A DNA stretch of 64,000 nt. Origin: Ylistrum balloti. Taxonomy: Eukaryota. Where the stretch lies: assembly GCF_031769215.1 (NCBI RefSeq), contig NW_026781985.1, positions 62,001-126,000 of the forward strand. The letters run 5' to 3'. The notes under the pieces were generated by a model. It was not told the DNA's origin and did not search any database. It was given only the letters and a program-made list of their open reading frames with translations. The position numbers were made by a program, and so were the translations under genes. Below, in pieces: positions 5,916-40,023 of the stretch (its first letter is position 1; each line of letters starts with the position of its first letter).

Positions 5916-6188
5916 GCTTGTTCGTTTGATGGGTTTATCGCACTGTCAACAGACAGGGTCTCGATGTAGTAGCGGTTACTACCTAAATGAATAAGATAAG
6001 GGAGCAAATTGAGTCAGGTGTCTCCCCAAAGTAAAATTCAACAAAATACAACAGATATATCAAAAGAAATATGATTTAAAGATATTCTGGTGAAAATGAA
6101 AAGAGTGATAATTTATACGATATGGTGTTTACAAATGAATCACTTGAAATATATATATATACACACATACATAAGTGTATATACATAT

Positions 6189-6354
6189 GTATATATTGAA
6201 AATCAAAACATTAACATGGCATGTAAAATCGTATGAAATCGCTAACGTTTTCCGGCCTGGTGGCCGTCTTCAGGCGTTTCCACAAGGCCGGAAAACGTTA
6301 GCCATTTCATACGATTTTACTTGCCATGTTAATGTTTTGATTTTCTATATATAC
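6189..6354. mobile_element. Short foldback element (~75-bp arms, 16-bp loop), probably an inverted Penelope-like element terminal remnant, set in (AT)n-rich flanks
   Basis: Arms ~6189-6263 and ~6280-6354 are reverse complements with few mismatches. The element contains the hammerhead, and hammerheads and inverted terminal duplications are known features of Penelope-like elements. Confidence 0.6.
6235..6280 (-). ncRNA. Minimal type-I hammerhead ribozyme (Penelope-like-element type, palindromic stem III)
   Basis: The minus strand reads GAAACGC-CUGAAGA-CGGCC(ACCA)GGCCG-GAAA-ACGU-UA-GCG(A)UUUC. This gives an intact CUGANGA/GAAA core, a 5-bp stem II, a self-complementary AACGUU stem III, a UUA cleavage triplet, and stem I GAAACGC pairing with GCG.UUUC. 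Confidence 0.75.
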
Positions 6355-7873: not shown

Positions 7874-8235
7874 CCTTTATTTTTACCCTCAGACCTATAT
7901 TATATTGCCTTTTAACAAATACATTCCCTTATTAGCCCCTTCGGGCAAATATTCCGTTACCCTTTAACAAGTCCATTCCCTTATTTGCCCCTTCGGGCAT
8001 GTATTCCATTGCCCTTTAACAAGTTCATCCCCTTATTTGCCCATTTGTGCATATTTTCCATCGCCCTTTAGCAAGCCCATTCCCTTATTTTCTCCCTCAG
8101 GCCTATATACTATGGCCCTTTAACAAAAACATCCACTTATTTGCCCCTTCGGACATATATTCGATTGCACTTTAACAATCCCATTCCCTAATTTTCTCCC
8201 TCAGGCCTATATTTCATTGCCCGGTAATAAGTCCA
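7874..8235. repeat. 52-bp minisatellite, ~7 diverged copies
   Basis: cccttatt recurs at 7926, 7978, 8030 and 8082, with variants at 8133 and 8186. Confidence 0.85.
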
Positions 8236-11200: not shown

Positions 11201-11238
11201 TCTATGTCATGAATTCCATTCACATTTTCACCACTTGG

Positions 11239-20200: not shown

Positions 20201-22547
20201 TATCATGGTAGAGGAGTAGTGTATCTCAACTGAGGGTTGTTGTGTCAGTGGAGAAGTAGTGTATCACAACAGAAGAGTGTTGAGGCATGGTAGGGAGGTA
20301 AGCGTATGACGGTAGAGGTGAGGTGTATCATGGTAGAGGTGAGGTGTATCACGGTAGAGCGGTATGTCACAGTAGAGGAGTAGTGTATCATGGCAGAGGA
20401 GTGGTGTATCAAAGTAAAATATGGGTGTATCACGGTATAGGAGAGGTATATCAAGGCAGATGTGTAACATGAAAGAGGAACGATCTGTCACTGTAGAGAG
20501 GAGGTGTATCACGGAAGAGTGGTATGTCACAGTAGAGAAGTAGTGTATCATGGTAAAGTAGGGGTTATCAAGGTAGAGGTGAGGTGTATCACGGCAGAGG
20601 TGAGGTGTGTCATGGTAAAGGTGAGGTATATCACGGTAGAGGTGAGGTGTATCATGGTAGAGGTGAGGTGTATCACGGTAGAGGTGAGGTGTATCACGGT
20701 AGAGGTGAGGTGTATCACGTAGAGGTGAGGTGTATCACAGTAGAGGTAAAGTGTATCACGGTAGAGCTGAGGCGTATCACGGTAAAGGGGAAGTGTAATA
20801 CGGTAGAGGTGAGGTGTATCACGGCAGAGGTGAGGTGTATCACGGTAGAGGCGAGATGTATCACGTAGAGGTGAGGTGTATCACGGTAGAGGTGAGCTGT
20901 ATCACGGTAAAAGGGGAGGTGTATCACGGTAGAGATGAGCTGTATCACGGTAAAAGGGGAGGTGTATCACGGTTGAGGTGAGCTGTATCATGGTAGAGGT
21001 GAGGTGTATCACGTAGAGGCGAGGTGTATCACGGTAGAGGTGAGGTGTATCACGGTAAAGGTGAGCTGTATCATGGTGGAGGTGAGGTGTATCACGGTAG
21101 AGGTGAGCTGTATCGTGGTAGAGGTGAGGTGTATCACGGTAGAGGCGAGATGTATCACGTAGAGGCGAGGTGTATCACGGTAGAAGTGAGGTGAGGTGTA
21201 TCACGGTAGAGGTTAGCTGTATCACGGTATAGGTGAGGTGTATCACGTAGAGGCGAGGTGTATCACGGTAGAGGTGAGGTGTATCACGTAGAGGCGAGGT
21301 ATATCACGGTAGAGGTGAGGTGTATCATGGTAGAGGTGAGGTGTATCACGGTAGAGGTGAGGTGTATCACGGTAGAGGTGAGGTGTATCACGTAGAGGCG
21401 AGGTGTATCACAGTAGAGGTAAAGTGTATCACGGTAGAGCTGAGGCGTATCACGGTAAAGGGGAAGTGTAATACGGTAGAGGTGAGGTGTATCACGGTAG
21501 AGGTGAGGTGTATCACGGTAGAGGCGAGATGTATCACGTAGAGGTGAGGTGTATCACGGTAGAGGTGAGCTGTATCACGGTAAAAGGGGAGGTGTATCAC
21601 GGTAGAGATGAGCTGTATCACGGTAAAAGGGGAGGTGTATCACGGTTGAGGTGAGCTGTATCATGGTAGAGGTGAGGTGTATCACGTAGAGGCGAGGTGT
21701 ATCACGGTAGAGTTGAGGTGTATCACGGTAAAGGTGAGCTGTATCATGGTGGAGGTGAGGTGTATCACGGTAGAGGTGAGCTGTATCGTGGTAGAGGTGA
21801 GGTGTATCACGGTAGAGGCGAGATGTATCACGTAGAGGCGAGGTGTATCACGGTAGAAGTGAGGTGAGGTGTATCACGGTAGAGGTTAGCTGTATCACGG
21901 TATAGGTGTGGTGTATCACGTAGAGGCGAGGTGTATCACGGTAGAGGTGAGGTGTATCACGTAGAGGCGAGGTGTATCACGGTAGAGATGAGGTGTAATA
22001 CGGTATAGGGGAGGCTTTGCCTTTATTCTTTCAACATTATGTTGATTTCCGAATAATATGTAGATAGCAAAGGTTTATATTTACATCACGTGATAACGAG
22101 TTAATACCTCCAAAGTCATGTAATGGGATCGGCATCGGTATGCTGACAGGGTGATGATTCAGATCGAACACCCCTTACTGAATATCTTACGTCATTCAGA
22201 GATTTAATGTCTAGACGTTATGCAATCGCACGATTTGTCGATGACAAATGTCATTCAGAGTGTTATGGAGGTCGCTACCAGATTTGCCACCTGTGGTACT
22301 GTTGACATGTGTACCTGTACGCTGTATGTGTGACAAAACACGGTCTTGTCTATGCGTGTAGGTATTTAGATATTCTTTCTTCAATCGAAAGCACGTTATA
22401 GAAAATCCAAACAGTAAATTAAATTGAATACAGCGAATAAACAAAATATTACGAACAGCTTACCTGTTACTCCAGACTTCCTGGTTTAAGACAGGTGTCA
22501 CAAGGGAAGTCACTCTCATTCAAAAACAAACTCCGCTTACCTTCCAT
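11239..22547 (-). CDS. Single-pass membrane protein with cytoplasmic PPxY motifs and an acidic tail (WBP1/VOPP1/CYYR1-like architecture), ~206 aa. Exons: 22547-22541 (tentative), 12125-11937, 11663-11239.
   Basis: Exons 12125-11937 and 11663-11239 join in phase 1 with good GT/AG sites. The product has a hydrophobic helix (GGVVGPIVGSVVVIAFIISLFCF), a stop-transfer RRRR, then LPPPY and LPPSY and a D/E-rich repeat. The candidate start exon ATG GAA G|gtaagc has the matching phase 1 but is less certain. Confidence 0.65.
13892..16830. repeat. Satellite array A: 41-bp unit (21+20 dimer) atcacggtagaggagagatgt-atcatggtagtgtaatgttc, ~70 units
   Basis: Period of 41 read directly (cacggtagag at 13921 and 13962); highly homogeneous, with a short degenerate interruption near 16490-16560. 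Confidence 0.97.
17300..19940. repeat. Satellite array B: 21-bp unit catcatggtaaaggagtggtg
   Basis: Direct reading; produces 7-aa-periodic ORFs in several frames. Confidence 0.97.
19940..22015. repeat. Satellite array C: 20-21-bp unit gtatcacggtagaggtgaggt, degenerate at its left end
   Basis: Direct reading; contains a 673-bp internal direct duplication. Confidence 0.95.
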
Positions 22548-24799
22548 TAAGTGGTCGACACTGCTGATTCACAGCGTGTACATTGCCATAATTTTGAAAA
22601 ACATATATCGGGAATTTAATATTTAATATTCGTGTTTATATGTGACCTCTTGTAACACACTCTGTGTGTCTGAGCGTACAATAAAATCTGAAATCTGAAA
22701 TCTGGAATCAGGGATAACGAGACGTTTGAAGGATAGATACCATACATTATCTATGAAAGAAAATGAATCAAAACAATTTGTTTTCTAAACTCGGCAGCTC
22801 TTATTAATTTGGCATGGGTTATGTTTTTTTTTTTTTTTTCTTATTTTGAGGGTGTGTTGTTTTTTTTTGGGGGGGGGGCGGGGGGTTGGGGGGGAGGGGT
22901 TTAGGGGAATGCTTTTTTGGGTTTTTTTCCAAACTGTATCGATATCTAATGAGATGATTCGGTAAGGCCGAACTTTGTTTGTACTCTTGATGATATTATT
23001 TAGATTGATACAGGATTTCATTTGAATACTTAGACACATGACAACGTGTAACAAGAGGCACGTAATAGTTGACCTTAGTAGACATGACAGGATGGACAGT
23101 GATCATACAGATAGTGCTTCAACAATACAATGTATGTATACTTGAGATGTATCAACACTACATCAACAACAAGGTGTGTTTAGTACATATTTCATATTCA
23201 GGCAAATACTAATGTTTTATGTTACTTACATACATAAATACTGATTATAGATATATCAACAAAAAACATAAATAACAAGAAAAGTGACGAAAATTGTATA
23301 AAAATATATAAGTTATCAAAGCAATGGATGCCAGGTATTAAAGAGAAATTATAAAACTCGATTACAGTACATGTATATTGACAATAGGTTCTTTCATTTC
23401 GCATTTGATCGATAGTAAGTTGGAATGTGCTTTCTTTCCAACATGTTTACATATTAGTTACTTATTTTTTTCTTTTCGCTTTCTTTTTAATTTTTTGACA
23501 TCAACAAACTTAAATGAGGAACTCTACATTCCAGGTATTTGTACGTAAACGTTATTTTGAACAAAAACTAGAAAACATTTTCATGATTAAAAATTCAGTC
23601 TTGAAAATCGATTACAAATATTCTATTGACGAGTTGGATGTCAAAAATATATATATATGTTAAAAATAAAATATAAGGTTTACATTTTTCAGCACTTCAT
23701 CCGTAGTACTAGAGATAGTTCAACTTGAAACGAGGAAAGTCCAGCGGGCGTCACATTTGACAACATTCGTGGCTTGTTGTTAATTTTACAAAATTTGATA
23801 GTTTGAAAACATGTGTAGACATATTTTGTATAAATATAATTAATAATGTCAATTATATCTGACGTAAAATATGAATAATACTCAAATTGATTTTTTTATT
23901 TTATTGGTCATTTTTATGTAAATAAAATAAACGGGAAATTACTGCTCCTGATGTATTAGGGCTGTTTTTTCTCAACAAAACGTGAATTTTATTTACCAAG
24001 TTTATTAAGACAATGAGAATATCATGTCTGATGACCACCGCTCACTCACCAGCTGTAATCAACACTATTGTCAATCTGTAATAGAGTTATCACGGGTAGC
24101 GTGCGACCCTAACGGATCAATTGGATCCAATTAACAACCAATTAACACCATAGAAATTCGTTATCGATTTTAACACGTTGATAGATCATCGATCACCAAT
24201 ATTGATCACCTATTATCACGATAACTTGTTGATCACGAGGCTGTTGTACCGACCGTATATTCTCTGTTACGTGTCAAGACGTTGAAAGATAACAGTTTAT
24301 TTTTAAATAATATAAATGCGAATTGTTCTTAGTAATCAGACATTTTATTTTTAAAAAAAAGATGACGTCTAATATATTAAAAAAATGACGTCATCAATTT
24401 TATTTTAAAAGCAGTAATGTTGGCCTTTTGTTTCGTATATTTGCTGACAAGTATCTCTACAAATTTGTTTAATATATACAATTATCGAAAAGACTAATGG
24501 TCATTAATTTTTTTTCTTAACATTTAGGATTATCTTTAAATTCACCTTCAAATAATATTTTGAATGAAATAAAATACATGAAAAGAGAATTTTTTTTCTT
24601 CTGTTTTTAAATTTCTTTCTTTCACATAACACTTGTAATTATGTATATTAAATGACACCATATGGTCAGTACCATTTTTATTACTTTAATACATTTCAGA
24701 ATATAAGTTTTAATGTTGAATTAAATCAAACGTTTCTGTATTTAACCTGTATATACATCTGCCTCGTTAAGATAAACAACAACTGGTACAGCTCGTTGT

Positions 24800-25050
24800 T
24801 TACCTTTGAAGTCACAGATGAATGTTTATAAAAGTAATCAAGGGTTTAAAGTCTGTTGAACTTTTCAGTCGATCACGTGACACAATAGGACATTGTTTAC
24901 ACGTTAAAGACAAGATGAGCAGAGTACCTATCCCCTGGCCCCCGGGACTGATTGGATGTGTCTCACGCGAGGAGAGCAGACACCTTGAGAAAGTCGACGG
25001 GCGCGGAGTAGATGTCGATTTCCCTGTGGCGTATAAGTACAATTCTCATC
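24800..25050 (+). promoter_or_regulatory. Putative promoter of cdc25 copy A
   Basis: CpG-rich stretch just upstream of the non-coding exon whose donor is gtaagt at 25161. It contains TTTGAA (24805, CHR-like), CACGTG (24874), inverted CCAAT (24951) and GGGCGCGG. The TSS cannot be determined from sequence alone. Confidence 0.55.
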
Positions 25051-25433
25051 AACATTGTCCTCTACATCATCGTTATATACAATCATTAGCTCTCATCGAA
25101 ATCCTGACTTGTTCTCCAACAACCTTCGCCTTCATCAAATCTGTACATCTGCTGTAAATCGTAAGTTCATTTTTGTGTAAGACACTTAAGATATTTTAAT
25201 GCGATCAAAATAATTGGTAAAAAAATGTTTGATGAATCTGTTAAAGGAGAAAAAAAATCATTATTCGTCTCATATTGACTAGTACGATAATGTATAATAA
25301 ATTCATCGTTTATATTTTATATTGTTTATCATATAAAACGAGCTTATTACACTTTAGTCGATCTTGTTAATTGATATGTCAGAATGTGTGACGTCACATT
25401 GAACAGTTGTCCTCTTGCCTTAATTCTCAGGTG

Positions 25434-28349
25434 ATGGCATCAACTTTGATTTTGACCCCATGCCGCAGCCTTGACTTCGACGACGAAGAGGTCAAATCTT
25501 TGATGACCCCGGAAGTAAAGAAGGATCTCCGTCATCTGTTCGATGATGATGATTCTGGGCTAGGAATAGATGATCACTTGGTAAGTAAATTTTTTGAAAC
25601 ATAAATCGAATCTGGTTACATTCACTAATCTTGATCCAGTCATGCAGAATAGACTCATATTCATACATAATTATAAAATTTCCAATCTAAACATGAATTT
25701 ATGATCTCCATGAAAACTCTTTTACATTTCTTAATTTCAATACTGCCGTAGGTCAATTGTTTTTACTTCTTATCAGTTTTATTTCTTTTCGAATCGGAAA
25801 AATATTGTTTGAGAATATTAAGTACAGATTTTCTCTCTGATGATATTAAGCATAAATTTTCTCCATGGTGATATTAAGCGTAAATTTTTCTATGATGATA
25901 TCAAGCGTAAATTTTCTATGATGATATTAGCATAATTTTTCTCTATTATGGTTAAAAATGACTTGTACATTTGAGCGATAATTCATATCAAAATGAAGTA
26001 AAACCACAAATATATAACGGTGACTGATTTTTTTTTCAGGCAGAGAGTCCATCAGCTGACTTCAAGGTGTCCACACGGTTAGATTTCAGCAACGTGTTCG
26101 CTACCCCAGGAAAACATATTGTAAGTGTAAAACACTAAAGCCTTTAAAATGTGAATTCAATGGATGAATTAATTGTTACATACATACCAACTTCGGTCCG
26201 TCCGACGCTTCTATTTCACACAACCAAGCGTTTATTTACAATACAACTTAATAATTTACTATTTTGTACTATTTTCAGATTAAAAGAAACGACACCGAAA
26301 TCAAGCGTTCCCTCTTCTCAGGCAAGCGTTTCCGTGATGAAGCTGACGATTTCCTAACTCCCTCACCAAAAGCACAAAAGAAGAATGATGGGGTTTTCAG
26401 CAGGACGATGTCTTGTGGGGTAAGCATATATTAGTTCGGGAAGTATAGATACTAACGAAACGTTTTGGTTTTAAATAACACTCTTTGTTGGTAAAGATAC
26501 GAAGTGGGAATTTACAAAAAAGGGGACAGGACAAGAAAAAGAAAGCCAAACCTTAACCACCAGATTTTCACCATGTTTAAAATAACCGCTGACTGATAAC
26601 TTTCTCAGTGGGATGATTAATTATGACCCAAATTTTCGTATCACAAATTTACTGATCTGTGATACGCATGTATCGTAAGACAATTCTACAATCATTTTTT
26701 ATTGTCTTTTCAACAGGAAAGACCGATATTGAGATCACGTGACCTTAAGGCTGCTGTTAACCGACTGGTGGAGGAGGACTTGGTGGGGGATGCGACAGAA
26801 ACGTTTTGTCTTCCGACTATCCGGGGCAAACATCAAGACCTTAAGTCTATCTCCGTAAACACGGTAAGGCAATGACGTCAACGATCATGTTCCGTAAAAT
26901 GTTTGTGCTTCTTTTCATACTCAGTTACATGTACTTATTAATCGATTGATTTACTCATTTAATTACTCGCCTTTTCGTTCGTTTATTTCTTTATTAATAT
27001 CTATTTTTGTTTACTTGTTTACACAGATGACTGACCTTTTAACCGAAAGATATGATGACGTCATCAATAACTACAGAATCATCGACTGCCGATACCCATA
27101 CGAGTATGAAGGAGGCCATATCAAGGTTTGTACCATTACATGAAGTGAATTTATCAGCTTGTGAATCAGAATATAAACTATACCAGCACCTATGATGTTG
27201 GTGAATGGCGAGATCAAAATAACTACCAGCTTTGAAATACTGGGATTATTGATAGGTCATAATTTGGTGTAAATTGCAAAATTTTCGTAACTGAATCAAA
27301 ATCAAAATATTAAAACAGGACAAAAATGTTGAGTTTTGATTGAAATTATTGATGTTATCAGATTTTTGCTGAAAATTTTCAGGACGCGGAGAACAGATAT
27401 ACACGTGATCAGATTCAACAGCTGCTTCATGAGACACCGACTCGTGACGTCACCGGAAAGAGAAACATTCTCATTTTCCACTGTGAATTCTCCTCCGAGA
27501 GGGGACCCAAAATGTAAGTTTCTCGTCTGCTTAAGTTAGGGTACCTATAATTACCATTCGACATATGATCGACTTCATTATTTAGTTTATGAATACACAT
27601 CGTTGAAAATGTGTAAATTATCAATTATGTTATCATTTTCCCCTTCAATAATAATATGTAATTATTCTATTTATATAATCATAATTGTTTTTTTATTTAC
27701 GTGTTCACATATTTCGTTTTAATCTCATTAACTTTACATAATGTGTTTGATTTTTCTCTTCGATTTCTGTTTTTATGTTTTCATTATTTTCTTTTCCCTA
27801 AAGGATGCGTTTCCTTAGATCTCAGGACCGTACTCAGAATGAGGCTAACTATCCGTCCTTGACCTTCCCCGAGGTGTACCTCCTGGACGGCGGCTACAAG
27901 GCATTCTATCACACAGAAAAGGTAGTGTATGCTTGTTTTATTTAAATTCAATGCTGCCATAGAAATATTAATGCAACTTCATGAAATATAATCATTTTTC
28001 AAACGATATCTTTTAATTTGACAATATGTACTTTTACTTTAGTTTAAGATATAAAAATAGGCTTTTCAAGATTATATGTAAACCACAAAAATTAGAAGAC
28101 ATCGTAGACAAAGAAATACTCTCAAAAATGTTAACATAAAGATGGTTGTATATTTTTTCTTAAATCCTAGAAGTATTGACATTGTAATTAAACGTTAACT
28201 TTTTCTCCTCACAGACACTGTGCCATCCCCAGGAATACAAACCAATGCTGCATCCTGGCCATTCTGAAGATTTACGTCACTTCCGAACTCGATCAAAATC
28301 CTGGTCGGCGGGGAACAAGAAGAGAACACTTTCCCGGCGTCGCCAATGA
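25434..28349 (+). CDS. cdc25: Cdc25 (M-phase inducer/string-like) dual-specificity phosphatase, copy A, 332 aa. Coding exons: 25434-25580, 26040-26120, 26279-26419, 26717-26863, 27027-27125, 27383-27513, 27804-27921, 28215-28349. A non-coding exon ends at 25160.
   Basis: All introns are GT-AG with consistent phases (0,0,0,0,0,2,0) and give one open frame. Canonical Cdc25 motifs are present: [35 protein letters not shown], catalytic [10 protein letters not shown] (HCX5R), [19 protein letters not shown] and C-terminal RSKSW. Confidence 0.97.
25825..25945. repeat. ~27-bp tandem repeat (x4) in a cdc25 intron, mirrored at ~33720-33840
   Basis: gatgatattaagc(a/g)taaattttct repeated. Confidence 0.75.
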
Positions 28350-28675
28350 ACCGCTCTAAAGAAATAGACAGCATCGTGCAACAATCTGGATACTTCTTTA
28401 AAATTAGATGACATCGGCGTTATTCCAGAAATTACGAATTGTGGTGTAAATTTCTGAGACTTTTAAACTCGTGATGCAATTGACAACATGTCTGGGTTTG
28501 AAGGATGTTTTAACACTTACATAAGTGGGCTTTCGTATATCATGAAGTGCTACATTAACGTTACGTTGTGAGTCCCTAGCGATTATAAGAAAAATGTTGG
28601 ACAATTTCAACTATACAAAGTGCTGTGGTGATTCCGAAGTGCTATTTTTGTTTTTTCGTTTGTTAACTCATTTCT

Positions 28676-28681
28676 AATAAA
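28676..28681 (+). terminator. Polyadenylation signal AATAAA of cdc25 copy A
   Basis: AATAAA ~330 nt after the stop codon, followed by a U/GU-rich tract. Confidence 0.65.
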
Positions 28682-28952
28682 AGATTGATGGACATTTCTT
28701 AATCTGTGTAATTTTTATTTTCAGGAACAATTAACACAAGGAGATTGATTTTCGTCATGTAATTGGCATTCGGGCAAACATTATTTTCTCTTAAAATATA
28801 ATTTGAAAACTTAGCCAAACATTATGATAACACGCTGTATACATAAAAGCAAAAACTGAGCTCAATGTTATCAAAAACATGAGACGCAAATTAGCGTTTC
28901 AGGTGCTTGAGTGATGAATTGATGTGTCGTTTATCTCTCGCTAAACTTAATT

Positions 28953-30918
28953 ACTCCATAGGAGAGTCCATGAACCTGTTACAGTCCCCTGAGGTGGTGA
29001 TACACTATAGGGAAGTCCATGAACCTTTTACAGTCCCATGTGGTGGTGATACACTATAGGGGAGTCCATAAACCTGTTACGATCCCCTGTGGTGGTGATA
29101 CACTATCGGGAAGTCCTTAAACCTATTAAAGTCCCCTGTGGTGGTGATACACTAAATGGAAGTCCTTAAACCTATTAAAGTCCCCTGTGGTGGTGATACA
29201 CTATAGGGGAGTCCATGAACCTGTTACAGTCCCCTGTGGTGGTGATAAACTATACGGAAGCCCATGAACTTGTTTTAGTCCCCTGTAGTGGTGATAAACT
29301 ATAGAGAAGTCCATGAACCTTTTAAAGTCCCCTGTGGTGATACATTACAGGGGAGTCCATGAACCTTTTACTGTCCCCTGTGGTGGTGATACACTATAGG
29401 GAAGTCCATGAACCTGTTACAGTCCCCTGAGGTGGTGATACACTATAGAGAAGTCCATGAACCTGTTACAGTCCCCTGTGGTGATACACTATAGGGAAGT
29501 TCATTAACCTGTTAAAATCCCCTGTGGTGGTGATACACTATAGGGGAATCAGTGAAGCTCTTACAGTCCCATGTGGTGGTGATACACTATAGGGAAGTCC
29601 ATGAACCTGTTACAATCCCCTGTGGTGGTGATACACTATAGGGAAGTCCATGAACCTGTTACAAGCCTCTGTGGTGGTGATACACTAGAGGGGAGTCCAT
29701 TAACCTCTTACACTCCCCTGTGGTGGTGATACACTATAGGGGAGTCAGTGAAACCTGTTACAATCCCCTGTGGTGGTGATACACTATAGGGGAGTCAGTG
29801 AAACCTGTTACAATCCTCTGTGGTGGTGATACACTAGAGGGGAGTCCATTAACCTCTTACACTCCCCTGTGGTGGTGATACACTATAGGAGAGTCAGTGA
29901 AACCTGTTACAATCCCCTGTGGTGGTGATACACTATAGGGGAATCAGTGAACCTCTTACAATGCCCTGTGGTGGTGATACACTATAGGGAAGTCCATGAA
30001 CCTGTTACAGTCCCCTGTGGTGGTGATACACTATAGAGAAGTCCATGAACCTGTTACAGTCCCCTGTGGTGGTGATTCACTCTTGGGGAGTAAACTAACC
30101 TGTTACAATCCCTTGTGTTGGTGATACACTATAGGGGAGTCCATTAACCACTTACACTCCCCTGTGGTGGTGATACACTATAGAGAAGTCCATGAACCTG
30201 TTACAGACCTCTGTGGTGATGGTACACCAGAGGGGAGTCAGTGAACCTGTTACAATCCCCTGTGGTGGTGATACACTATAGAGAAGTCCATGAACCTGTT
30301 ACAGACCCCTGTGATGATGGTACACCAGAGGGGAGTCAGTGCCCTGTGGTGGTGATACACTATAGGGAAGCCCATGAACCTGTTACAGTCCCCTGTGGTG
30401 GTGATACACTATAGAGAAGTCCATGAACCTGTTACAGTCCCCTGTGGTGAAGATACACTATAAGGGAGTCAGTGAACCTATTACAGTCCCCTGTGGTGGT
30501 GATTCACTCTTGGGGAGTAAACTAACCTGTTACAATCCCTTGTGTTGGTGATACACTATAGGGGAGTCCATTAACCACTTACACTCCCCTGTGGTGGTGA
30601 TACACTACAGGGAAGTCCATGAACCTGTTACAATCCCCTGTGTTGGTGATACACTATAGGGGAGTCCATTAACCACTTACACTCCCCTGTGGTGGTGATA
30701 CACTATAGAGAAGTCCATGAACCTGTTACAGACCTCTGTGGTGATGGTACACCAGAGGGGAGTCAGTGAACCTGTTACAATCCCCTGTGGTGGTGATACA
30801 CTATAGGGAAGTCCATGAACCTGTTACAGTCCCCTGTTGTGGTGATTCACTCTTTGGGAGTAAACTAACCCATTAAAGTCCTCTGTTGTAGTAATATACT
30901 ATTGGGGAGTCAGTGAAC
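28953..30918. repeat. 49-bp minisatellite (~40 units) in the palindrome spacer; consensus gtccatgaacctgttacagtcccctgtggtggtgatacactatagggaa
   Basis: Period of 49 read directly (acagtccc at 28981 and 29030); units continue with point variants and small deletions to ~30918. Confidence 0.95.
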
Positions 30919-30979
30919 CTCCTTGTGTTAATTGTTCCTGGAAATAAAACTACACAGAATAAGAAATGTCCATCAATCT

Positions 30980-30985
30980 TTTATT
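30980..30985 (-). terminator. Polyadenylation signal AATAAA of cdc25 copy B
   Basis: Mirror position of the copy A signal (TTTATT on the + strand). Confidence 0.65.
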
Positions 30986-31315
30986 AGAAATGAGTTAACA
31001 AACGAAAAAACAAAAATAGCACTTCGGAATCACCACAGCACTTTCTATAGTTGAAATTGTCCAGCATTTTTCTTATAATCGCTAGGGACTCACAACGTAA
31101 CGTTAATGTAGCACTTCATGATATACGAAAGCCCACTTACTTATGTAAGTGTTAAAACATCCTTCAAACCCAGACATGTTGTCAATTGCATCACGAGTTT
31201 AAAAGTCTCAGAAATTTACACCACAATTCGTAATTTCTGGAATAACGCCGATGTCATCTAATTTTAAAGAAGTATCCAGATTGTTGCACGATGCTGTCTA
31301 TTTCTTTAGAGCGGT

Positions 31316-34230
31316 TCATTGGCGACGCCGGGAAAGTGTTCTCTTCTTGTTCCCCGCCGACCAGGATTTTGATCGAGTTCGGAAGTGACGTAAATCTTCA
31401 GAATGGCCAGGATGCAGCATTGGTTTGTATTCCTGGGGATGGCACAGTGTCTGTCAGGAGAAAAAGTTAACGTTTAATTACAATGTCAATACTTCTAGGA
31501 TTTAAGAAAAAATATACAACCATCTTTATGTTAACATTTTTGAGAGTATTTCTTTGTCTACGATGTCTTCTAATTTTTGTGGTTTACATATAATCTTGAA
31601 AAGCCTATTTTTATATCTTAAACTAAAGTAAAAGTACATATTGTCAAATTAAAAGATATCGTTTGAAAAATGATTATATTTCATGAAGTTGCATTAATAT
31701 TTCTATGGCAGCATTGAATTTAAATAAAACAAGCATACACTACCTTTTCTGTGTGATAGAATGCCTTGTAGCCGCCGTCCAGGAGGTACACCTCGGGGAA
31801 GGTCAAGGACGGATAGTTAGCCTCATTCTGAGTACGGTCCTGAGATCTAAGGAAACGCATCCTTTAGGGAAAAGAAAATAATGAAAACATAAAAACAGAA
31901 ATCGAAGAGAAAAATCAAACACATTATGTAAAGTTAATGAGATTAAAACGAAATATGTGAACACGTAAATAAAAAAACAATTATGATTATATAAATAGAA
32001 TAATTACATATTATTATTGAAGGGGAAAATGATAACATAATTGATAATTTACACATTTTCAACTATGTGTATTCATAAACTAAATAATGAAGTCGATCAT
32101 ATGTCGAATGGTAATTATAGGTACCCTAACTTAAGCAGACGAGAAACTTACATTTTGGGTCCCCTCTCGGAGGAGAATTCACAGTGGAAAATGAGAATGT
32201 TTCTCTTTCCGGTGACGTCACGAGTCGGTGTCTCGTGAAGCAGCTGTTGAATCTGATCACGTGTATATCTGTTCTCCGCGTCCTGAAAATTTTCAGCAAA
32301 AATCTGATAACATCAATAATTTCAATCAAAACTCAACATTTTTGTCCTGTTTTAATATTTTGATTTTGATTCAGTTACGAAAATTTTGCAATTTACACCA
32401 AATTATGACCTATCAATAATCCCAGTATTTCAAAGCTGGTAGTTATTTTGATCTCGCCATTCACCAACATCATAGGTGCTGGTATAGTTTATATTCTGAT
32501 TCACAAGCTGATAAATTCACTTCATGTAATGGTACAAACCTTGATATGGCCTCCTTCATACTCGTATGGGTATCGGCAGTCGATGATTCTGTAGTTATTG
32601 ATGACGTCATCATATCTTTCGGTTAAAAGGTCAGTCATCTGTGTAAACAAGTAAACAAAAATAGATATTAATAAAGAAATAAACGAACGAAAAGGCGAGT
32701 AATTAAATGAGTAAATCAATCGATTAATAAGTACATGTAACTGAGTATGAAAAGAAGCACAAACATTTTACGGAACATGATCGTTGACGTCATTGCCTTA
32801 CCGTGTTTACGGAGATAGACTTAAGGTCTTGATGTTTGCCCCGGATAGTCGGAAGACAAAACGTTTCTGTCGCATCCCCCACCAAGTCCTCCTCCACCAG
32901 TCGGTTAACAGCAGCCTTAAGGTCACGTGATCTCAATATCGGTCTTTCCTGTTGAAAAGACAATAAAAAATGATTGTAGAATTGTCTTACGATACATGCG
33001 TATCACAGATCAGTAAATTTGTGATACGAAAATTTGGGTCATAATTAATCATCCCACTGAGAAAGTTATCAGTCAGCGGTTATTTTAAACATGGTGAAAA
33101 TCTGGTGGTTAAGGTTTGGCTTTCTTTTTCTTGTCCTGTCCCCTTTTTTGTAAATTCCCACTTCGTATCTTTACCAACAAAGAGTGTTATTTAAAACCAA
33201 AACGTTTCGTTAGTATCTATACTTCCCGAACTAATATATGCTTACCCCACAAGACATCGTCCTGCTGAAAACCCCATCATTCTTCTTTTGTGCTTTTGGT
33301 GAGGGAGTTAGGAAATCGTCAGCTTCATCACGGAAACGCTTGCCTGAGAAGAGGGAACGCTTGATTTCGGTGTCGTTTCTTTTAATCTGAAAATAGTACA
33401 AAATAGTAAATTATTAAGTTGTATTGTAAATAAACGCTTGGTTGTGTGAAATAGAAGCGTCGGACGGACCGAAGTTGGTATGTATGTAACAATTAATTCA
33501 TCCATTGAATTCACATTTTAAAGGCTTTAGTGTTTTACACTTACAATATGTTTTCCTGGGGTAGCGAACACGTTGCTGAAATCTAACCGTGTGGACACCT
33601 TGAAGTCAGCTGATGGACTCTCTGCCTGAAAAAAAAATCAGTCACCGTTATATATTTGTGGTTTTACTTCATTTTGATATGAATTATCGCTCAAATGTAC
33701 AAGTCATTTTTAACCATAATAGAGAAAAATTATGCTAATATCATCATAGAAAATTTACGCTTGATATCATCATAGAAAAATTTACGCTTAATATCACCAT
33801 GGAGAAAATTTATGCTTAATATCATCAGAGAGAAAATCTGTACTTAATATTCTCAAACAATATTTTTCCGATTCGAAAAGAAATAAAACTGATAAGAAGT
33901 AAAAACAATTGACCTACGGCAGTATTGAAATTAAGAAATGTAAAGAGTTTTCATGGAGATCATAAATTTATGTTTAGATTGGAAATTTTATAATTATGTA
34001 TGAATATGAGTCTATTCTGCATGACTGGATCAAGATTAGTGAATGTAACCAGATTCGATTTATGTTTCAAAAAATTTACTTACCAAGTGATCATCTATTC
34101 CTAGCCCAGAATCATCATCATCGAACAGATGACGGAGATCCTTCTTTACTTCCGGGGTAATCAAAGATTTGACCTCTTCGTCGTCGAAGTCAAGGCTGCG
34201 GCATGGGGTCAAAATCAAAGTTGATGCCAT
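31316..34230 (-). CDS. cdc25: Cdc25 phosphatase, copy B (inverted duplicate), 332 aa. Coding exons on the minus strand: 34230-34084, 33625-33545, 33386-33246, 32948-32802, 32638-32540, 32282-32152, 31861-31744, 31450-31316.
   Basis: Reverse complement of copy A with all splice sites intact. The only coding differences seen are M24I (ATG>ATT) and one synonymous His codon (CAT>CAC) in the catalytic-site exon. Confidence 0.96.
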
Positions 34231-34614
34231 CACCTGAGAATTAAGGCAAGAGGACAACTGTTCAATGTGACGTCACACATTCTGACATATCAATTAACAA
34301 GATCGACTAAAGTGTAATAAGCTCGTTTTATATGATAAACAATATAAAATATAAACGATGAATTTATTATACATTATCGTACTAGTCGATATGAGACGAA
34401 TAATGATTTTTTTTCTCCTTTAACAGATTCATCAAACATTTTTTTACCAATTATTTTGATCGCATTAAAATATCTTAAATGTCTTACACAAAAATGAACT
34501 TACGATTTACAGCAGATGTACAGATTTGATGAAGGCGAAGGTTGTTGGAGAACAAGTCAGGATTTCGATGAGAGCTAATGATTGTATATAACGATGATGT
34601 AGAGGACAATGTTG

Positions 34615-34860
34615 ATGAGAATTGTACTTATACGCCACAGGGAAATCGACATCTACTCCGCGCCCGTCGACTCGCTCAAGGTGTCTGCTCTCCTCGCGTG
34701 AGACACATCCAATCAGTCCCGGGGGCCAGGGGGATAGGTACTCTGCTCATCTTGTCTTTAACGTGTAAACAATGTCCTATTGTGTCACGTGATCGACTGA
34801 AAAGTTCAACAGACCTTGATTACTTTTATAAACATTCATCCATGACTTCAAAGGTAAACA
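34615..34860 (-). promoter_or_regulatory. Putative promoter of cdc25 copy B
   Basis: Mirror of the copy A promoter, with an 8-bp deletion and several substitutions. Confidence 0.55.
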
Positions 34861-36469
34861 ACGAGCTGTACCAGTTGTTGTTTATCTTAACGAGGCAGAT
34901 GTATACACAAGTTAAATACAGAAACGTTTGATTTAATTCAACATTAAAACATATATTCTGAAATATATTAAAGTAATAAAAATGGTACTGACCATATGGT
35001 GTCATTTAATATACATAATTACAAATATAATGTATAAGAAAGAAAGAAATTTAAAAACAGAAGAAAAAAATTCTTTTCATGTATCTTATTATATATCAAA
35101 TATTATTTGAAAGTGAATTTAAAGATAATCCTACTTGTAAAGGAAAAAATACTAGATCAATGAACACAAGTCCTTTTGATAATCATACAAATTAGATAGA
35201 TTTGTCACAATATTTGTCAGTAAAAACACGAAACAAAAACCGTCATTACTGCTGTTATTTGATTTGATGGCGTCATTTGATATCATCTTTCTATGTTGAC
35301 ACGTAACAGAGAATATACGGTCGGTACAACATCCTCGCGATCAAGAAATTAACGAGATGATAGGTAATCAATATTGGTGATCGATGATCTATCAACTTGT
35401 TAAAATCGATAACGAATTTCTACGGTGTTAATTGTTAATCCGATTCAATGAATCAGTTAGGGTCGCGCGCTACCTGTGATAACTCTATGACAGACTGACA
35501 ATAGCGTTGATTACAGCTGGTGAGTGAGCGGTGGTCATCAGACGTTATCCTGATTGTCTTATTTAACTGGGTAAATACAGTTCACGTTTTTTTAGCCATA
35601 AATACACCAGGAGCAGTAATTTCCTGTTGATTCTATTTACATAAAAATGACTAATAATTTTTTTTTTTAAAAATCGATTTGGGTATTATACATATTTTAC
35701 GTCCGATATAATTTACATTATTGATATGCCTACTCATATTTTCATACTATCAAATTCTGTAAATTTAACTACAATATAAACACAATAAGCCTTCTTTGTG
35801 CCTCTTTTGTTCCCTTTCCACGACACAAACGCTAAAACGCCAGGTGGTGCAACAAGCTATGGAGATTGTCAAATATGACGCCTGTTGTACTTCACTGGAA
35901 CTATCTGCAGTATTACGGTCAAGTGCCGAAAAACATTAGCCTTACTTTATTTTTAAAAATGTTTTCTTCAAAATCCAACTCGTCAATAGAACATTTGTAT
36001 TCGAATTTCTAAACTGAATATTTAATCATAAAAATGTTTGCTAGTTTTAGTTCAAAATAACGTTCACCTATATTACGTAGAAGTACCTGAAATTTAGAGT
36101 TCATTATTGAAGTTTGAAGAAAAAATACGTAATTTGTGTGTAGGGAGTGTTGCAAAGGAGCAAACTATCTAATTTCTAGTAAAACTTATGGGAAGAAAGC
36201 ACATTCCAACTTACTATCGATCAAATGAAAGAACCTGTTGTCAATATACATGTACTGTAATCGAGCTCTATATGGGACAAGTAATTTCTCTTTAATACCT
36301 GGCTTTGATAATATATACACTTTTATGCAATTTTCGTCCAGACTATGTTTTTTTTATTACTTCCACAGGAAGCTCTCAATCTTCACATTTCATTCACACT
36401 GTCAGATGTCCATTGATACAGATATAATTATACAAAGTGGCATGATAACTCAACAGGGGAGGTAACTGG

Positions 36470-36960
36470 GGTTTTGACTCTTTATAGTGTATCAATACCA
36501 ATCCAGCCATGTTCCAGGGCTGCTGAGAGCGAAAGTGATTGTATCCCCTGGAGTATCGAGGATGATAACTAATAATACAAAGAGTTAGATAAGTCTATAG
36601 TAGATTTAAGAAACTCATCCAGAATTACTTAATCCTTATTATTACTTGAACAAGAAATGGATTGGGTGCTTTCACTTTCCATAATTTTTCCATTCAAAAG
36701 GTCATCAAGTCTTCCATCTTCATGTGCAATTTCCGTGTCATAAATTTCGTTAGAGTTACCTCCCTTGTTTAGCATCTCATTCTGTCCCTTTTTATTACCG
36801 TCTATTTTCATTAGGAACATGCCACAATGTTTTTGGCTCTGACCTTGAGACATTCCTTAATTCTGTTTCTATTTTCTTTTGATGGATTTTATAAGATTTA
36901 TTTACAGTTTCCGTGTACACTATAATAACCTAATTTTAAAAGTAATTTTGTTATTGTGAT
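36470..36960 (-). mobile_element. Degenerate LINE ORF2 fragment (endonuclease-RT linker and start of RT)
   Basis: Broken frames read ..KKIETELRNVSRSEPKTLW.. and ..LLNGKIMESE..ISC..NNKD*VILDEFLKSTIDL.., resembling the LNxxITxxEI..KNNK..G.D.ILNE.LK pattern before RT domain 1; multiple stops. Confidence 0.6.
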
Positions 36961-38519
36961 TTTTTTATTGACATCATAACTACGTTCAGATTTCTGAAAA
37001 TCTAGTTGCTTTATATGACATTCTCTTGCAAACCAACGGTTGCTAGTATTACATCGTCTGTTGATTTAATTAATGAAAATATGTTAGTTTATAGCCAAAA
37101 TTATTTGATCTTTCCCGATACAATTTTCAAATTAGATAGATATATAGATCGACAGAGATAACATGGAAAATTCCTATATATATAAGTTTGTATAAAAACA
37201 AGTAATTAAAAAGCTGGTCAATTGAAAACAATCACTCGAGCTTACCGTTGTACATGTTTAAATAGTCTGACATTCATTCAACATTCATACAATTCATCAA
37301 CAACCACGAAAAATTTATACCTATGGTAAAAAAGTATCCCTTTTTATATTGAACATGTACTTGATGATAAAAGCAAACAACTTGTGAGTAAAATAATAAT
37401 ATAGTTTTGATTGCACCTGTATACGGTGAGAGAGAAAAAAATAGGAGAGTTACCTACTCTTACACTGGTAAGCACTGCGACCTTTTAAAAGCGAGGAACC
37501 GTGACGTGTTTCGAAAGACAAACTGTTATCGATGCAATCATTAGCCTGATGCAATAATAACAGTAACGTAACGAAGGGAAATGGGCGATAGAGATTTCGA
37601 GCGAAATTATTTTTGTGGCGATAAAGATGGGGAGTTAGTGGGGGAAAGAGTCATGTTGTACGTTCGACACCGATGGGGCGCCACGGTTTCGAGGCGGAAC
37701 GCCCGTCACCATATCAAAAAGTTCCTGGGTGTTGTAACGTTATAAGTACAGGCTTGGACTATTTTATGAGACAATAAATTCCTTTTATGATATGTAAATG
37801 TATTGCAACCATCACGGTGTTGCCAATATATCGACAACGGGTATAAACACGAACCGTGCCTTTACAGCATGAGGGCAGGTCCGGAAAGATTCATGTTGGG
37901 ACGTTTTCCATCCTTTGGGATCGCAATGTGGTCGGCCGAATCACAGGACGATACAATAACCGTTGTTCTGTGTTTTCTAACCCAAACACAAAGCGCAGTC
38001 CCTTAATGACTGCACCTACAAGGCTGCACCTTGCTATTTGACCTACTCATTTGGCCAAATAACTCCCTCGTACCAAAGCCTTAAACAAAATTTTACTACT
38101 AATATGAATGTACCTTATATCACAAATAGCTCTGTTCGCACTGAAAAGAACGATGGAGTTAAATGATACTGAAACGAATATAAAATGACACTTCAAATGA
38201 TAAATTGAATGAAAGAATAGTTTTTGTACATGTTTTCAATTGATTTCCATGTCTAACTGTCACAGTAAATTTTGGAATAAGCTCTTATAACTTACGGAGA
38301 AATTCTGATGACGGGCCAATTTGTCAAAAGGTAACCGAACACTGGTAGTAATATGACAACAGGACAGTAGTCTTGGGTTTTTTCTGTTTGTTTTTTTTTT
38401 CAATCTTTTATTTTTCAAGATTTTTCAGTTCAGGGCAGTAACCCACACACGCTCGCACATACACATCACATAAGTCATGTGGATGGGGAGGAGTGTAGAG
38501 GAGAAGGACTTAGGAAGAC

Positions 38520-39055
38520 TTGAGAACACGTTACAGATGTATTTTGATCTATCCTAACCACAGGGACCTGAGAACTCGTTATAGATGTATTTGATCCTAT
38601 CCCAACCATAGAGACCTGAGAACGCGTTACATGTGTATTTTTACCTATTTCAACCACAGGGACCTGAGAACTCGTTATAGATGTATTTGAAGCTATCCCA
38701 ACCATAGGGACCTGAGAACTCGTTATTGATGTACTTGAACCTATCCCAACCATAGGGACCCGAGAACGCGTTACAGGTGTATTTTTACCTATTTCAACCA
38801 CAGGGACCTGAGAACTCGTTATAGATTTATTTGGACCTGTCCCAACCACAGGGACCTGAGAACACGTTACAGAAGTAGTTGGACCTGTCCCAACCACAGG
38901 GACCTGAGAACACGTTACAGAAGTAGTTGGACCTGTCCCAACCACAGGGACCTGAGAACACGTTACAGGTATATTTTTACCTATTTCAACCACAGGGACC
39001 TGAGAACTCGTTATAGATTTATTTGGACCTGTCCCAACCATATGGACCCGAGGAC
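38520..39055. repeat. 48-bp minisatellite, ~11 copies, open on the minus strand as 16-aa S/T/V/P-rich repeats
   Basis: ccaaccacagggacctgagaacacgttacag.. recurs; ORF 38475-39041 shows a 16-aa period. Confidence 0.85.
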
Positions 39056-40023
39056 GCGTTACCGTGCTTTAGACCTATCTATATTTCTCACAGGCCGTTT
39101 GGTAATACATTTTATAGTGGTGCGGATACTAGTGATATCGATATTATCTGTTGCCTTAATTTTCCAGGTGATTTGTTATCATCCCTTGCTTATAGTCGAC
39201 AATTTAGGATTCAGTTTCTGCAGACATCGCCAGACATGAATTGAGCAATGAATTAGAGATGTGGTCTGTACAGGCAACAAAAACTGACAACATCACCCAG
39301 TCCATTACATAGATGTGAGAAATAGACATCACAAGGAAAAAAATGGTTAGGGAATCTTTCTAACGCTATCAATTTATTACTGAATACATAAGTTTCTAAT
39401 AATCAACGGAATATTTGGAAAATGTTGGGTTTTTTTTCTTTAACTGATAATATCTGCAGAAAATTAGGCTGGTAACCCCCATCCGCATCCCAGTCCACAT
39501 TCCCATCCTCAACTCCATCCAACACTCTTCCTCCCATTGAAAAGTCCTGTCTTTATCTGTGGCTACCATTTAGACACAACGATGTATACTATTTTTTCCT
39601 TACCTGCTGAAAGGCCGAAAAGCCCTAGTAGTGGATATAAAACCTAGTAAATAAATAGGTATTACACTAGAAATCACCTCGTGACTACATAAAGAGCATA
39701 TCAACAAACAAGCTAGTCTTTCACGATAATGGCTAACACCTGTCCTCTAACAGTATTAAGTCGTTTTTCTAAAGGTTGGTTTTCCCTGACTCTTTGGTGT
39801 TGACTGTGTGTATATTTATATATATGTTGTCATGGAGAATGCACCATGATAGTTTTGTAAACTTTTGCCAGATCCCGGGTTGTTCTTTGAGTAACAACAG
39901 ATGGACTCTTATGGTCAACGAAAACGTTCTACTAACATCTTGTTCTTTCTTCGAAAAATAGCAATAATTATCATTATTTAGTTTTCGAGATATTAGTATG
40001 CAAAGTAGATGTCATTGATTATA

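What the first reader, a model, noticed from the sequence alone, without database searches (positions are those of the whole stretch)
23260..36355. Two intact cdc25 genes arranged as a 13-kb convergent palindrome
Seen: a whole transcription unit (~1.6 kb of upstream DNA, promoter, 9 exons, polyA signal) is duplicated in inverted, tail-to-tail orientation around a 2.2-kb spacer, and both copies keep every splice site and the HCEFSSER active site. Established: Cdc25 is a dosage-sensitive CDK1 activator, and paralogs can be meiosis-specific (Drosophila twine versus string). Gene-bearing palindromes kept alike by gene conversion are best known from sex chromosomes and germline-expressed genes. Inference: this may be a dedicated, dosage-doubled or germline/early-embryo cdc25 locus maintained as a palindrome.
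Basis: partly seen in the sequence, partly recalled or inferred. Interest (0 to 1): 0.85.

Follow-up and report, generated by a model that had tools for sequence, protein, structure and literature searches.

The report
Inverted pair of scallop cdc25-like genes
A saucer scallop carries two almost identical copies of a cell-division phosphatase gene lying tail to tail, kept alike by copying between the copies; the structure is real, but it is an ordinary kind of young gene duplicate in a family that duplicates often in scallops.

Summary
The window is Ylistrum balloti contig JAUZWB010000703.1. Arms 23265-28746 (+) and 30916-36370 (-) are inverted copies around a 2.2-kb spacer: 205 nt of unique sequence plus a one-way 49-bp minisatellite. 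Each arm holds a complete 8-coding-exon, 330-aa Cdc25-type gene. NCBI already annotates both (XP_060064562.1 and XP_060064563.1), and they differ only by M24I.

Arm divergence is stepped: K about 0.20 and 0.17 at the outer end, 0.045, 0.008, 0.001 over the gene body, then 0.027 at the inner edge. That fits an older inverted duplication whose transcription unit was recently homogenised by gene conversion.

Contigs from four other individuals argue against an assembly artefact. Core depth is about 1.6-2.1 times the flank. One arm-specific indel sits near 1:1 in all four. Both 3' junctions are present.

Orientation on single molecules and expression could not be tested, because no raw long reads and no RNA run were available.

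Scallops have at least six short cdc25-like lineages. They carry frequent local duplicates, both direct (Pecten, Argopecten) and inverted (Mizuhopecten, Argopecten). The germline or dosage reading is therefore untested and not needed to explain the structure. This is a new member of a known kind, of modest interest. The scan had already noted the same gene-conversion signature on this stretch (s1-238027).

The parts
23265..28746 (+). Arm 1 of the inverted duplication: about 2.2 kb upstream of the ATG, the whole gene, the 3' UTR, and about 65 nt past the poly(A) signal.
   Evidence: This copy keeps the ancestral orientation relative to the syntenic neighbour gene.
30916..36370 (-). Arm 2, the mirror copy of arm 1. 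It abuts the minisatellite directly.
   Evidence: Its arm-specific outer contigs are present in four other individuals.
24932..28520 (+). Homogenised core (conversion tract) of arm 1. It is 99.75% identical to 31144-34732, and 99.9% identical over 25721-28520.
31144..34732 (-). Homogenised core of arm 2.
   Evidence: It assembles as collapsed single contigs at about 2x flank depth in other individuals.
25434..28349 (+). cdc25-like gene copy 1, CDS from ATG to stop, encoding XP_060064562.1 (330 aa, M24). Coding exons: 25434-25580, 26046-26120, 26279-26419, 26717-26863, 27027-27125, 27383-27513, 27804-27921, 28215-28349.
31316..34230 (-). cdc25-like gene copy 2, CDS, encoding XP_060064563.1 (330 aa, I24). 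Coding exons: 34230-34084, 33619-33545, 33386-33246, 32948-32802, 32638-32540, 32282-32152, 31861-31744, 31450-31316.
24940..25161 (+). Putative core promoter and non-coding 5' exon of copy 1. It has a reverse CCAAT box (ctgATTGGatg, about 24947-24957), a TATA-like TATAAG near 25030, and a donor at 25161|gtaagt. The acceptor is ctcag|GTGATG at 25430/25431. The mirror in arm 2 is about 34503-34724.
   Evidence: Read directly from the sequence. This is inferred, with no RNA evidence.
28676..28681 (+). AATAAA poly(A) signal of copy 1.
30980..30985 (-). AATAAA poly(A) signal of copy 2.
28747..28957 (.). Unique part of the spacer, found only next to arm 1.
   Evidence: and 39 (no other copy in the window). 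Contigs of X1, X3 and X5 run from the arm core into exactly this sequence (loose end at 30919).
28958..30920 (+). Spacer minisatellite: 49-bp unit, about 40 copies, 80-85% matches, all in one orientation. It matches no Rfam family.
25505..25505 (+). The only coding difference between the copies: G in arm 1 (Met24), and T in gene sense at 34159 in arm 2 (Ile24). It sits next to the invariant T25-P26.

Best explanation
This is a real, lineage-specific inverted (tail-to-tail) segmental duplication of a unit of about 5.4 kb. The unit carries a complete short cdc25-like gene (M-phase inducer phosphatase-like) in the scallop Ylistrum balloti.

The duplication is fairly old, since the outer arm has diverged to K about 0.17-0.20. 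A central 3.6 kb has since been overwritten, probably more than once, by non-allelic intrachromosomal gene conversion between the arms. That stretch covers the putative core promoter, the 5' exon, all eight coding exons with their introns, and most of the 3' UTR. As a result the two genes differ by one conservative residue.

Both copies most likely encode active Cdc25 phosphatases that dephosphorylate CDK1. The locus belongs to a scallop gene family that keeps making local duplicates, both direct and inverted.

Shown here: the structure, the intact genes, the stepped identity profile, two copies in other individuals, and purifying selection.

Inferred: gene conversion as the homogenising process, the promoter and 5' exon, enzymatic activity, and the inverted orientation in individuals other than the reference.
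For: K is 0.20, 0.17, 0.045, 0.008 and 0.001 moving inward, then 0.027 at the inner shoulder. The 1710-nt identical run was never reached in 20000 permutations. Introns are as identical as exons, so selection on the coding sequence cannot explain the profile.

The genes are intact, and both translate exactly to RefSeq proteins.

Cdc25 identity:
- Rhodanese domain.
- HCEFSSER active site.
- E = 1e-57 to the human CDC25B catalytic domain over residues 141-328.
- Conserved DSGLG and TP motifs in the N-terminal region.

Purifying selection: dN/dS is 0.11 against the Pecten ortholog, and 0.06 in the catalytic part.

Evidence against an artefact comes from contigs of four other individuals, from two studies and two organism labels:
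- The collapsed core contig has 1.6-2.1 times the depth of the 2.2-2.4-kb flank contig.
- The arm-specific 1-nt indel at 34729 is near 1:1 in all four (13.5/30, 33.4/62.2, 16/29.6, 21.7/32.9).
- The arm-1 junction sequence appears as the loose end at 30919 in X1, X3 and X5.
- Arm-2-type junction letters at 30950/30959 are present in X2 and X5, so X5 holds both junctions.

Concerted evolution: about 20 core positions differ from the reference in all four runs with no reference-type contig, although the two reference arms agree with each other at those positions.

Family context:
- Pecten orthologs form a direct tandem array, with copies 2 and 3 being 97.4% identical.
- Argopecten has a 6.7-kb direct repeat at 96.5% identity.
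- Mizuhopecten and Argopecten also have inverted pairs in sister lineages.
- The upstream neighbour gene is syntenic with Argopecten.
Against: - No single molecule or raw long read showing both orientations was available, so the inverted orientation outside the reference rests on junction logic.
- Logan contigs drop minor variants. 'Both copies share the non-reference letters' could therefore partly be bubble popping, and word depth is only a rough guide to copy number.
- Some reference differences between the arms (31064, 31135, 31455) appear only as the arm-1 type in the other individuals. They may be private to the reference or may be consensus errors.
- Polishing with multi-mapped reads could have exaggerated arm identity in the reference.
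- A second, nested duplication or replacement event would leave the same profile as gene conversion.
Confidence: 0.8

Rival explanations
1. Assembly artefact: a single cdc25-like gene assembled twice, through a fold-back chimera or a mis-join of two haplotypes in opposite orientation.
For: The core is 99.9% identical, which is less divergent than typical bivalve alleles. The scan noted another large inverted duplication with a spacer of about 2 kb in the same assembly (s1-234380). No long reads could be inspected.
Against: - The arm edges are diverged (K 0.03-0.20), and homology stops at 23265 and 36370 instead of continuing as haplotypes would.
- The spacer is asymmetric: 205 nt of unique sequence on one side only, plus a one-way minisatellite.
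- In four independent individuals the core has about 2x flank depth, an arm-specific indel is near 1:1 in all four, and both 3' junctions are found.
Confidence: 0.04
2. Two-step duplication without gene conversion. In this view an old inverted duplicate was later replaced or overlaid by a fresh inverted copy of only the transcription unit, for example by template switching at the minisatellite. The core would then be young rather than repeatedly converted.
For: The identity steps are sharp. Arm 2 abuts the minisatellite directly. The family makes new segmental copies often.
Against: There are at least four identity levels (0.20/0.17, 0.045, 0.008, 0.001) plus an inner shoulder at 0.027, all collinear with no extra junctions. 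Several nested conversion tracts explain this more simply than several precise replacements. The four other individuals share about 20 core differences from the reference on what appears to be both copies, which implies exchange continued after population divergence.
Confidence: 0.1
3. Selected germline or embryonic dosage module. Here the palindrome would be maintained by selection because two identical, co-regulated copies supply extra Cdc25 for meiotic maturation or rapid cleavage divisions.
For: Both copies are intact and under purifying selection. The homogenised tract coincides with the transcription unit including the putative promoter. Several CDC25 transcripts are more abundant in released oocytes of a clam, and seven CDC25 genes are reported for Crassostrea gigas (PMC4254928). 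Primate X/Y palindromes with more than 99% arm identity are maintained by gene conversion (PMC8981503).
Against: There are no expression data for this species. The gene is one of at least six paralog lineages, and the orthologs in Pecten and Argopecten are direct repeats, so orientation looks incidental. Conversion tracts naturally end where homology has decayed, and constrained exons help preserve homology, so the match with the transcription unit needs no selection for dosage.
Confidence: 0.15

Closest known systems
Gene-bearing palindromes of primate X and Y chromosomes, kept at more than 99% arm identity by arm-to-arm gene conversion (PMC8981503, PMC3403216)
   Same: Inverted arms around a unique spacer, an intact protein-coding gene in each arm, and arm identity of 99.75-99.9% over the core. 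The identity profile requires gene conversion.
   Different: The arms are only about 5.4 kb. High identity covers only the central 3.6 kb, and the outer arm has decayed to about 82-85% of aligned bases, with many gaps. The spacer is mostly a minisatellite. There is no evidence of sex linkage or of germline expression. The genes converge tail to tail.
Small inverted gene duplicates evolving in concert on autosomes, such as the Drosophila hsp70 87A pair and Amy inverted duplicates (from my own knowledge, not checked here)
   Same: Single-gene arms of a few kb, conversion restricted to the gene and its near flanks with diverged outer flanks, and an ordinary chromosomal context.
   Different: The gene family and phylum differ. 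Here the pair is convergent with a minisatellite spacer.
Cdc25 / M-phase inducer phosphatase family (human CDC25A/B/C; Drosophila string and twine)
   Same: A rhodanese-fold catalytic domain with HCEFSSER, 188 residues alignable to CDC25B at E = 1e-57, and a C-terminal tail. The CDC25B residues I recall as substrate-recognition hot spots (R488, R492, Y497; numbering from memory) align with R, R and Y in the alignment. A DSG-type motif and an R-x-x-S site are present in the N-terminal part.
   Different: The N-terminal regulatory region is only about 140 aa, and the Pfam M-inducer_phosp model does not match. This gene is one of at least six short paralog lineages in scallops, so it is not a one-to-one ortholog of string, twine or any vertebrate CDC25.
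Local cdc25-like gene clusters of other scallops (Pecten maximus LR736849.1, Argopecten irradians CM084274.1, Mizuhopecten yessoensis NEDP02005425.1)
   Same: The exon structure is the same (8 coding exons, most of them the same length). They show young segmental duplicates of 3-7 kb. Inverted pairs also occur: a convergent pair in Mizuhopecten L005 and a divergent pair in Argopecten L006.
   Different: The direct orthologs in Pecten and Argopecten are head-to-tail repeats at 96.5-97.4% identity. The inverted pairs elsewhere are older (83-96%) and belong to sister lineages. Only the Ylistrum pair shows a near-identical core.

Membership tests
Cdc25 (M-phase inducer) dual-specificity phosphatases | Rhodanese-like catalytic domain | tested here: met
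   Pfam PF00581, E = 1.1e-11, residues 184-282 in both copies.
Cdc25 (M-phase inducer) dual-specificity phosphatases | HCX5R active-site loop (HCEFSSER in Cdc25s) | tested here: met
   HCEFSSER is encoded at 27479 (+) and 32186 (-) and aligns to the CDC25B loop.
Cdc25 (M-phase inducer) dual-specificity phosphatases | Similarity to solved CDC25 catalytic domains across the whole domain, including the C-terminal tail | tested here: met
   E = 1e-57 to CDC25B (1cwr) over query residues 141-328. CDC25A and CDC25C also match.
Cdc25 (M-phase inducer) dual-specificity phosphatases | Long N-terminal regulatory region (Pfam M-inducer_phosp, PF06617) | tested here: not met
   There is no PF06617 hit at E <= 0.1. 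The N-terminal part is about 140 aa and keeps only short motifs (DSGLG, TP, R-x-x-S) shared with other molluscan kin. The same holds for all the scallop paralogs returned.
Cdc25 (M-phase inducer) dual-specificity phosphatases | Dephosphorylates CDK1 at pThr14/pTyr15 and drives M-phase entry | not testable with these tools
   This needs an enzyme assay or oocyte injection.
Gene-conversion-maintained palindromes | Inverted arms around a non-duplicated spacer | tested here: met
Gene-conversion-maintained palindromes | Arm-to-arm identity above 99% | tested here: inconclusive
   This is met for the 3.6-kb core (99.75%) but not for the whole arm. The outer 1.7 kb is 82-96% identical and the inner 225 nt is 97.3% identical.
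Gene-conversion-maintained palindromes | Arms more alike within a genome than either arm is to its counterpart in other populations or species (concerted evolution) | tested here: inconclusive
   Divergence is about 1% between the reference and four other individuals, against 0.1-0.25% between the reference arms. No reference-type contigs appear at about 20 core sites. However, Logan contigs can hide one of two variants.
Gene-conversion-maintained palindromes | Both orientations present on one DNA molecule | not testable with these tools
   Only contigs of short-read runs were served. Orientation rests on the reference contig and on the opposite relative orientation of the minisatellite at the two 3' junctions.
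Gene-conversion-maintained palindromes | Germline-biased expression of the arm genes (typical of, though not defining, primate X/Y palindromes) | not tested

The most novel reading that the evidence does not exclude
Inverted pairing of cdc25-like genes may not be incidental in scallops. Inverted pairs turned up in three of the six loci examined: Ylistrum (convergent, 99.9% core), Mizuhopecten L005 (convergent) and Argopecten L006 (divergent). Under this reading the Ylistrum palindrome would be a selected module. One version is that its arms are kept identical to double a maternal or meiotic Cdc25 dose. Another is that convergent read-through across the 2.2-kb minisatellite spacer makes double-stranded RNA that feeds back on the family. 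Nothing found here excludes this, and nothing supports it beyond intact genes and a conversion tract that matches the transcription unit.
Probability: 0.1. Interest if true: 0.55.

Novelty: new member of a known kind. Interest (0 to 1): 0.3.

Why it matters
This is a clean, small example of concerted evolution in an inverted gene pair outside vertebrates and insects. The whole history is readable in 13 kb: old edges, nested conversion tracts, and a minisatellite spacer. The gene involved is dosage-sensitive in model organisms.

It also shows that scallops hold a dynamic family of short cdc25-like genes with repeated local duplications. That matters to anyone studying oocyte maturation or cleavage control in bivalve aquaculture species, and to anyone annotating these genomes, because the copies collapse in short-read assemblies.

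It does not open a new mechanism.

Tried and rejected
- RNA evidence: the single run search (kind any) returned only DNA runs kept as Logan contigs, so splice sites, the 5' exon and copy-specific expression could not be checked.
- Long-read test of orientation: no raw long reads were served.
- Spacer minisatellite: its 49-bp unit is not homologous to the 38-bp array that follows Pecten copy 1 at a similar distance. Scores were 15 and 10 against a null 99th percentile of 18-20, so no shared ancestral array can be claimed. It has only a short 16-nt motif in common with the 48-bp array at 38517-39062 (score 22 against 19).
- Hammerhead check: this genome is rich in hammerhead-ribozyme satellites, so I tested whether the spacer is one. 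An Rfam E-value scan of 22000-40000 found nothing.
- Repeats at the outer breakpoints: the outer arms have no other copy in the window. There is only a weak inverted monomer of the spacer unit at 36453-36500.
- Mizuhopecten P0153 is not on record, so its locus was not seen.
- Literature: no paper in the library describes this locus, a nuclear Y. balloti genome analysis, or a bivalve cdc25 expansion beyond a remark on seven C. gigas genes.
- A longer canonical cdc25 in Y. balloti: none appeared within the 181-577 aa range visible to the search. Proteins above 577 aa were not searched.
Full report
**What is there**

The window belongs to the saucer scallop Ylistrum balloti, assembly GCA_031769215.1, contig JAUZWB010000703.1.

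A repeat search and a self-BLAST show two collinear inverted arms, about 23265/23350-28746 and 30916-36272/36370. One HSP covers 24383-28746 against 35278-30916 at 97.9% over 4381 nt. Weaker collinear HSPs (84% and 75%) extend the homology outward.

The 2.2-kb spacer is not symmetric. It has 205 nt of unique sequence next to arm 1 (28747-28957). A 49-bp minisatellite of about 40 units follows, all in one orientation (28958-30920), and it runs straight into arm 2. It matches no Rfam family, so it is not one of the hammerhead satellites that other notes report in this genome.

**The genes**

Each arm encodes HCEFSSER.

A search with the active-site exon returned a 330-aa protein that proved to be the window's own product. 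It is XP_060064562.1, with a sister XP_060064563.1. NCBI names both 'M-phase inducer phosphatase-like', and both lie on this contig in opposite strands.

Threading those proteins onto the DNA gives eight coding exons per copy, with canonical GT-AG at every junction:
- Copy 1: 25434-28349 (+).
- Copy 2: 34230-31316 (-).

The proteins differ only by M24I. The second exonic difference (27430/32235) is synonymous.

Directly upstream of the ATG there is an acceptor (ctcag|GTGATG). Further up lie a donor (25161|gtaagt), a TATA-like element and a reverse CCAAT box. AATAAA lies about 330 nt after each stop codon.

The protein has these Cdc25 features:
- A rhodanese domain.
- An alignment to the human CDC25B catalytic domain over 188 residues at E = 1e-57.
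- A short N-terminal part of about 140 aa that does not match Pfam's M-inducer_phosp model.
- DSGLG, T25-P26 and R-x-x-S motifs in that N-terminal part, shared with other molluscan kin.

Against the Pecten maximus ortholog, dN/dS is 0.11, and 0.06 in the catalytic half. The gene is therefore under purifying selection.

**The identity profile**

Jukes-Cantor distance between the arms changes in steps:

| Arm 1 segment | K |
|---|---|
| 23265-23934 | 0.20 |
| 23935-24528 | 0.17 |
| 24529-24931 | 0.045 |
| 24932-25720 | 0.008 |
| 25721-28520 | 0.001 |
| last 225 nt before the spacer | 0.027 |

The longest identical run, 1710 nt, was never approached in 20000 permutations.

Introns make up most of the core and are as identical as the exons, so coding constraint cannot explain the pattern. 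An older inverted duplication whose centre was overwritten by one or more non-allelic gene-conversion events can. The scan's other note on this stretch (s1-238027) reached the same reading, and I confirmed it quantitatively.

The homogenised tract runs from the putative core promoter to just before the poly(A) signal.

**Is it real?**

The run search returned five DNA runs, all kept as Logan contigs. They came from five samples, two studies and two organism labels.

I laid four of these runs on window 30861-36860. That stretch covers arm 2 plus 60 nt of the array and 590 nt of flank. Their contigs are mostly 95-99% like the reference, so they come from other individuals. Five results bear on the question.

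1. The core assembles as one collapsed contig of 2.3-3.1 kb. Its word depth is 1.6-2.1 times that of the 2.2-2.4-kb unique flank contig:

| Run | Core depth | Flank depth |
|---|---|---|
| X1 | 26.4 | 16.6 |
| X2 | 62.7 | 37.8 |
| X3 | 29.8 | 14.3 |
| X5 | 19.1 | 9.6 |

It is also 1.4-2.9 times the depth of arm-2-specific outer contigs.

2. The 1-nt indel that distinguishes the arms at 24931/34733 is present in both states at about 1:1 in all four individuals. That is expected of a fixed difference between two copies, not of an allele.

3. In X1, X3 and X5 the core contig continues beyond 30919 into exactly the reverse complement of 28745-28774. This is the arm-1 junction.

4. X2 and X5 also hold contigs with arm-2-type letters at 30950/30959 next to the array. 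X5 therefore holds both junctions.

5. The diverged outer part of arm 2 is present in all four runs.

Together with the diverged arm edges and the asymmetric spacer, this rules out 'one copy assembled twice', a fold-back chimera, and a haplotype mis-join for practical purposes.

What is not shown independently is the inverted orientation on one molecule. It rests on the reference contig. It is also supported by the fact that the two gene copies are followed by the same array family in opposite relative orientations.

**Concerted evolution**

At about 20 core positions all four runs carry a non-reference letter with no reference-type contig laid. The two reference arms agree with each other at those positions. 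So arm-to-arm divergence (0.1-0.25%) is several-fold lower than divergence between individuals or populations (about 1%).

This suggests exchange between arms continued after those lineages separated. The caveat is that Logan contigs drop minor variants, although they did keep both states at 34729, 33941 and 35144.

**Family context**

A protein search found nearly three thousand hits at E <= 1e-20. Most of the 120 best listed are short bivalve proteins (about 200-380 aa), often with many per species. Y. balloti has at least six.

A tree of 28 scallop and outgroup proteins places the pair with Pecten P0152 and Argopecten P0154. Lineage-specific duplicate pairs appear in several species.

| Locus | Arrangement | Identity |
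|---|---|---|
| Pecten maximus ortholog (L002) | three head-to-tail copies about 10 kb apart | copies 2 and 3: 97.4% over 4.3 kb |
| Argopecten ortholog (L003) | 6.7-kb direct repeat | 96.5% |
| Mizuhopecten sister lineage (L005) | convergent pair | exons 83-94% |
| Argopecten sister lineage (L006) | divergent pair | 86-96% |

The neighbour gene upstream of arm 1 is collinear with the neighbour of the Argopecten ortholog. Arm 1 therefore keeps the ancestral orientation and arm 2 is the inverted copy.

Synonymous divergence from Pecten is about 1.0, against K about 0.2 for the oldest part of the arms. Since the orthologs in both relatives are direct repeats, the inverted arrangement probably arose in the Ylistrum lineage. 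Past conversion could make the arms look younger than they are.

**Interpretation**

The functional part is untested. That part proposes a dedicated, dosage-doubled, germline or early-embryo locus. The only indirect support is that several CDC25 transcripts rise in released clam oocytes and that C. gigas has seven CDC25 genes (PMC4254928).

The family makes direct and inverted local duplicates repeatedly. Conversion tracts also end naturally where homology has decayed. A neutral birth-and-death plus conversion history is therefore sufficient.

The closest known systems are the conversion-maintained palindromes of primate sex chromosomes (PMC8981503, PMC3403216) and small inverted duplicates evolving in concert on autosomes. 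This is a small, partly decayed instance of that kind. Its genes were already annotated.

**Verdict**

- This is a new member of a known kind.
- Interest is about 0.3.

Noticed in passing
window 13892-21997: An 8-kb G-rich satellite with 21/41-bp units (TATCATGGTAGAGGAGAGGTG) and GC skew of +0.45 to +0.65. It lies between the syntenic neighbour gene and arm 1.
   Followed up: no
window 36508-36567: A short element about 240 nt outside arm 2 with word depth of 3,000-30,000 in four runs, so it is very high copy in the genome. Just before it, 36453-36500 is a weak (about 75%) inverted monomer of the 49-bp spacer unit.
   Followed up: partly
window 38517-39062: A 48-bp minisatellite of about 11 copies. 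It shares only a 16-nt motif with the spacer unit, in the opposite orientation.
   Followed up: partly
window ~11300-13550: Exons of a neighbouring gene, collinear by tblastx with a 275-aa gene that has no Pfam hit, upstream of the Argopecten ortholog (L003 1375-3393). This shows conserved synteny of the locus.
   Followed up: partly
L002 (Pecten maximus LR736849.1) 593-22934: Three head-to-tail cdc25-like copies. Copies 2 and 3 are 97.4% identical over 4.3 kb. A 3-kb array of 38-bp units (4598-7665) starts about 660 nt after the stop of copy 1, a similar distance to the Ylistrum array, but the units are not homologous.
   Followed up: yes
L005 (Mizuhopecten) 10001-22804; L006 (Argopecten) 2535-21869: There are further inverted cdc25-like pairs in sister lineages. 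L005 has a convergent pair with a 7.3-kb spacer. L006 has a divergent pair whose arms lie about 2.4 kb apart, plus a third copy at about 19.3-21.9 kb.
   Followed up: partly
window 1096-1273: A run of 178 N, an assembly gap. It was left untouched.
   Followed up: no
window 33763-33819: Run X5 (organism label B) has a 55-nt deletion inside intron 1 of the collapsed gene contig, relative to the reference.
   Followed up: no
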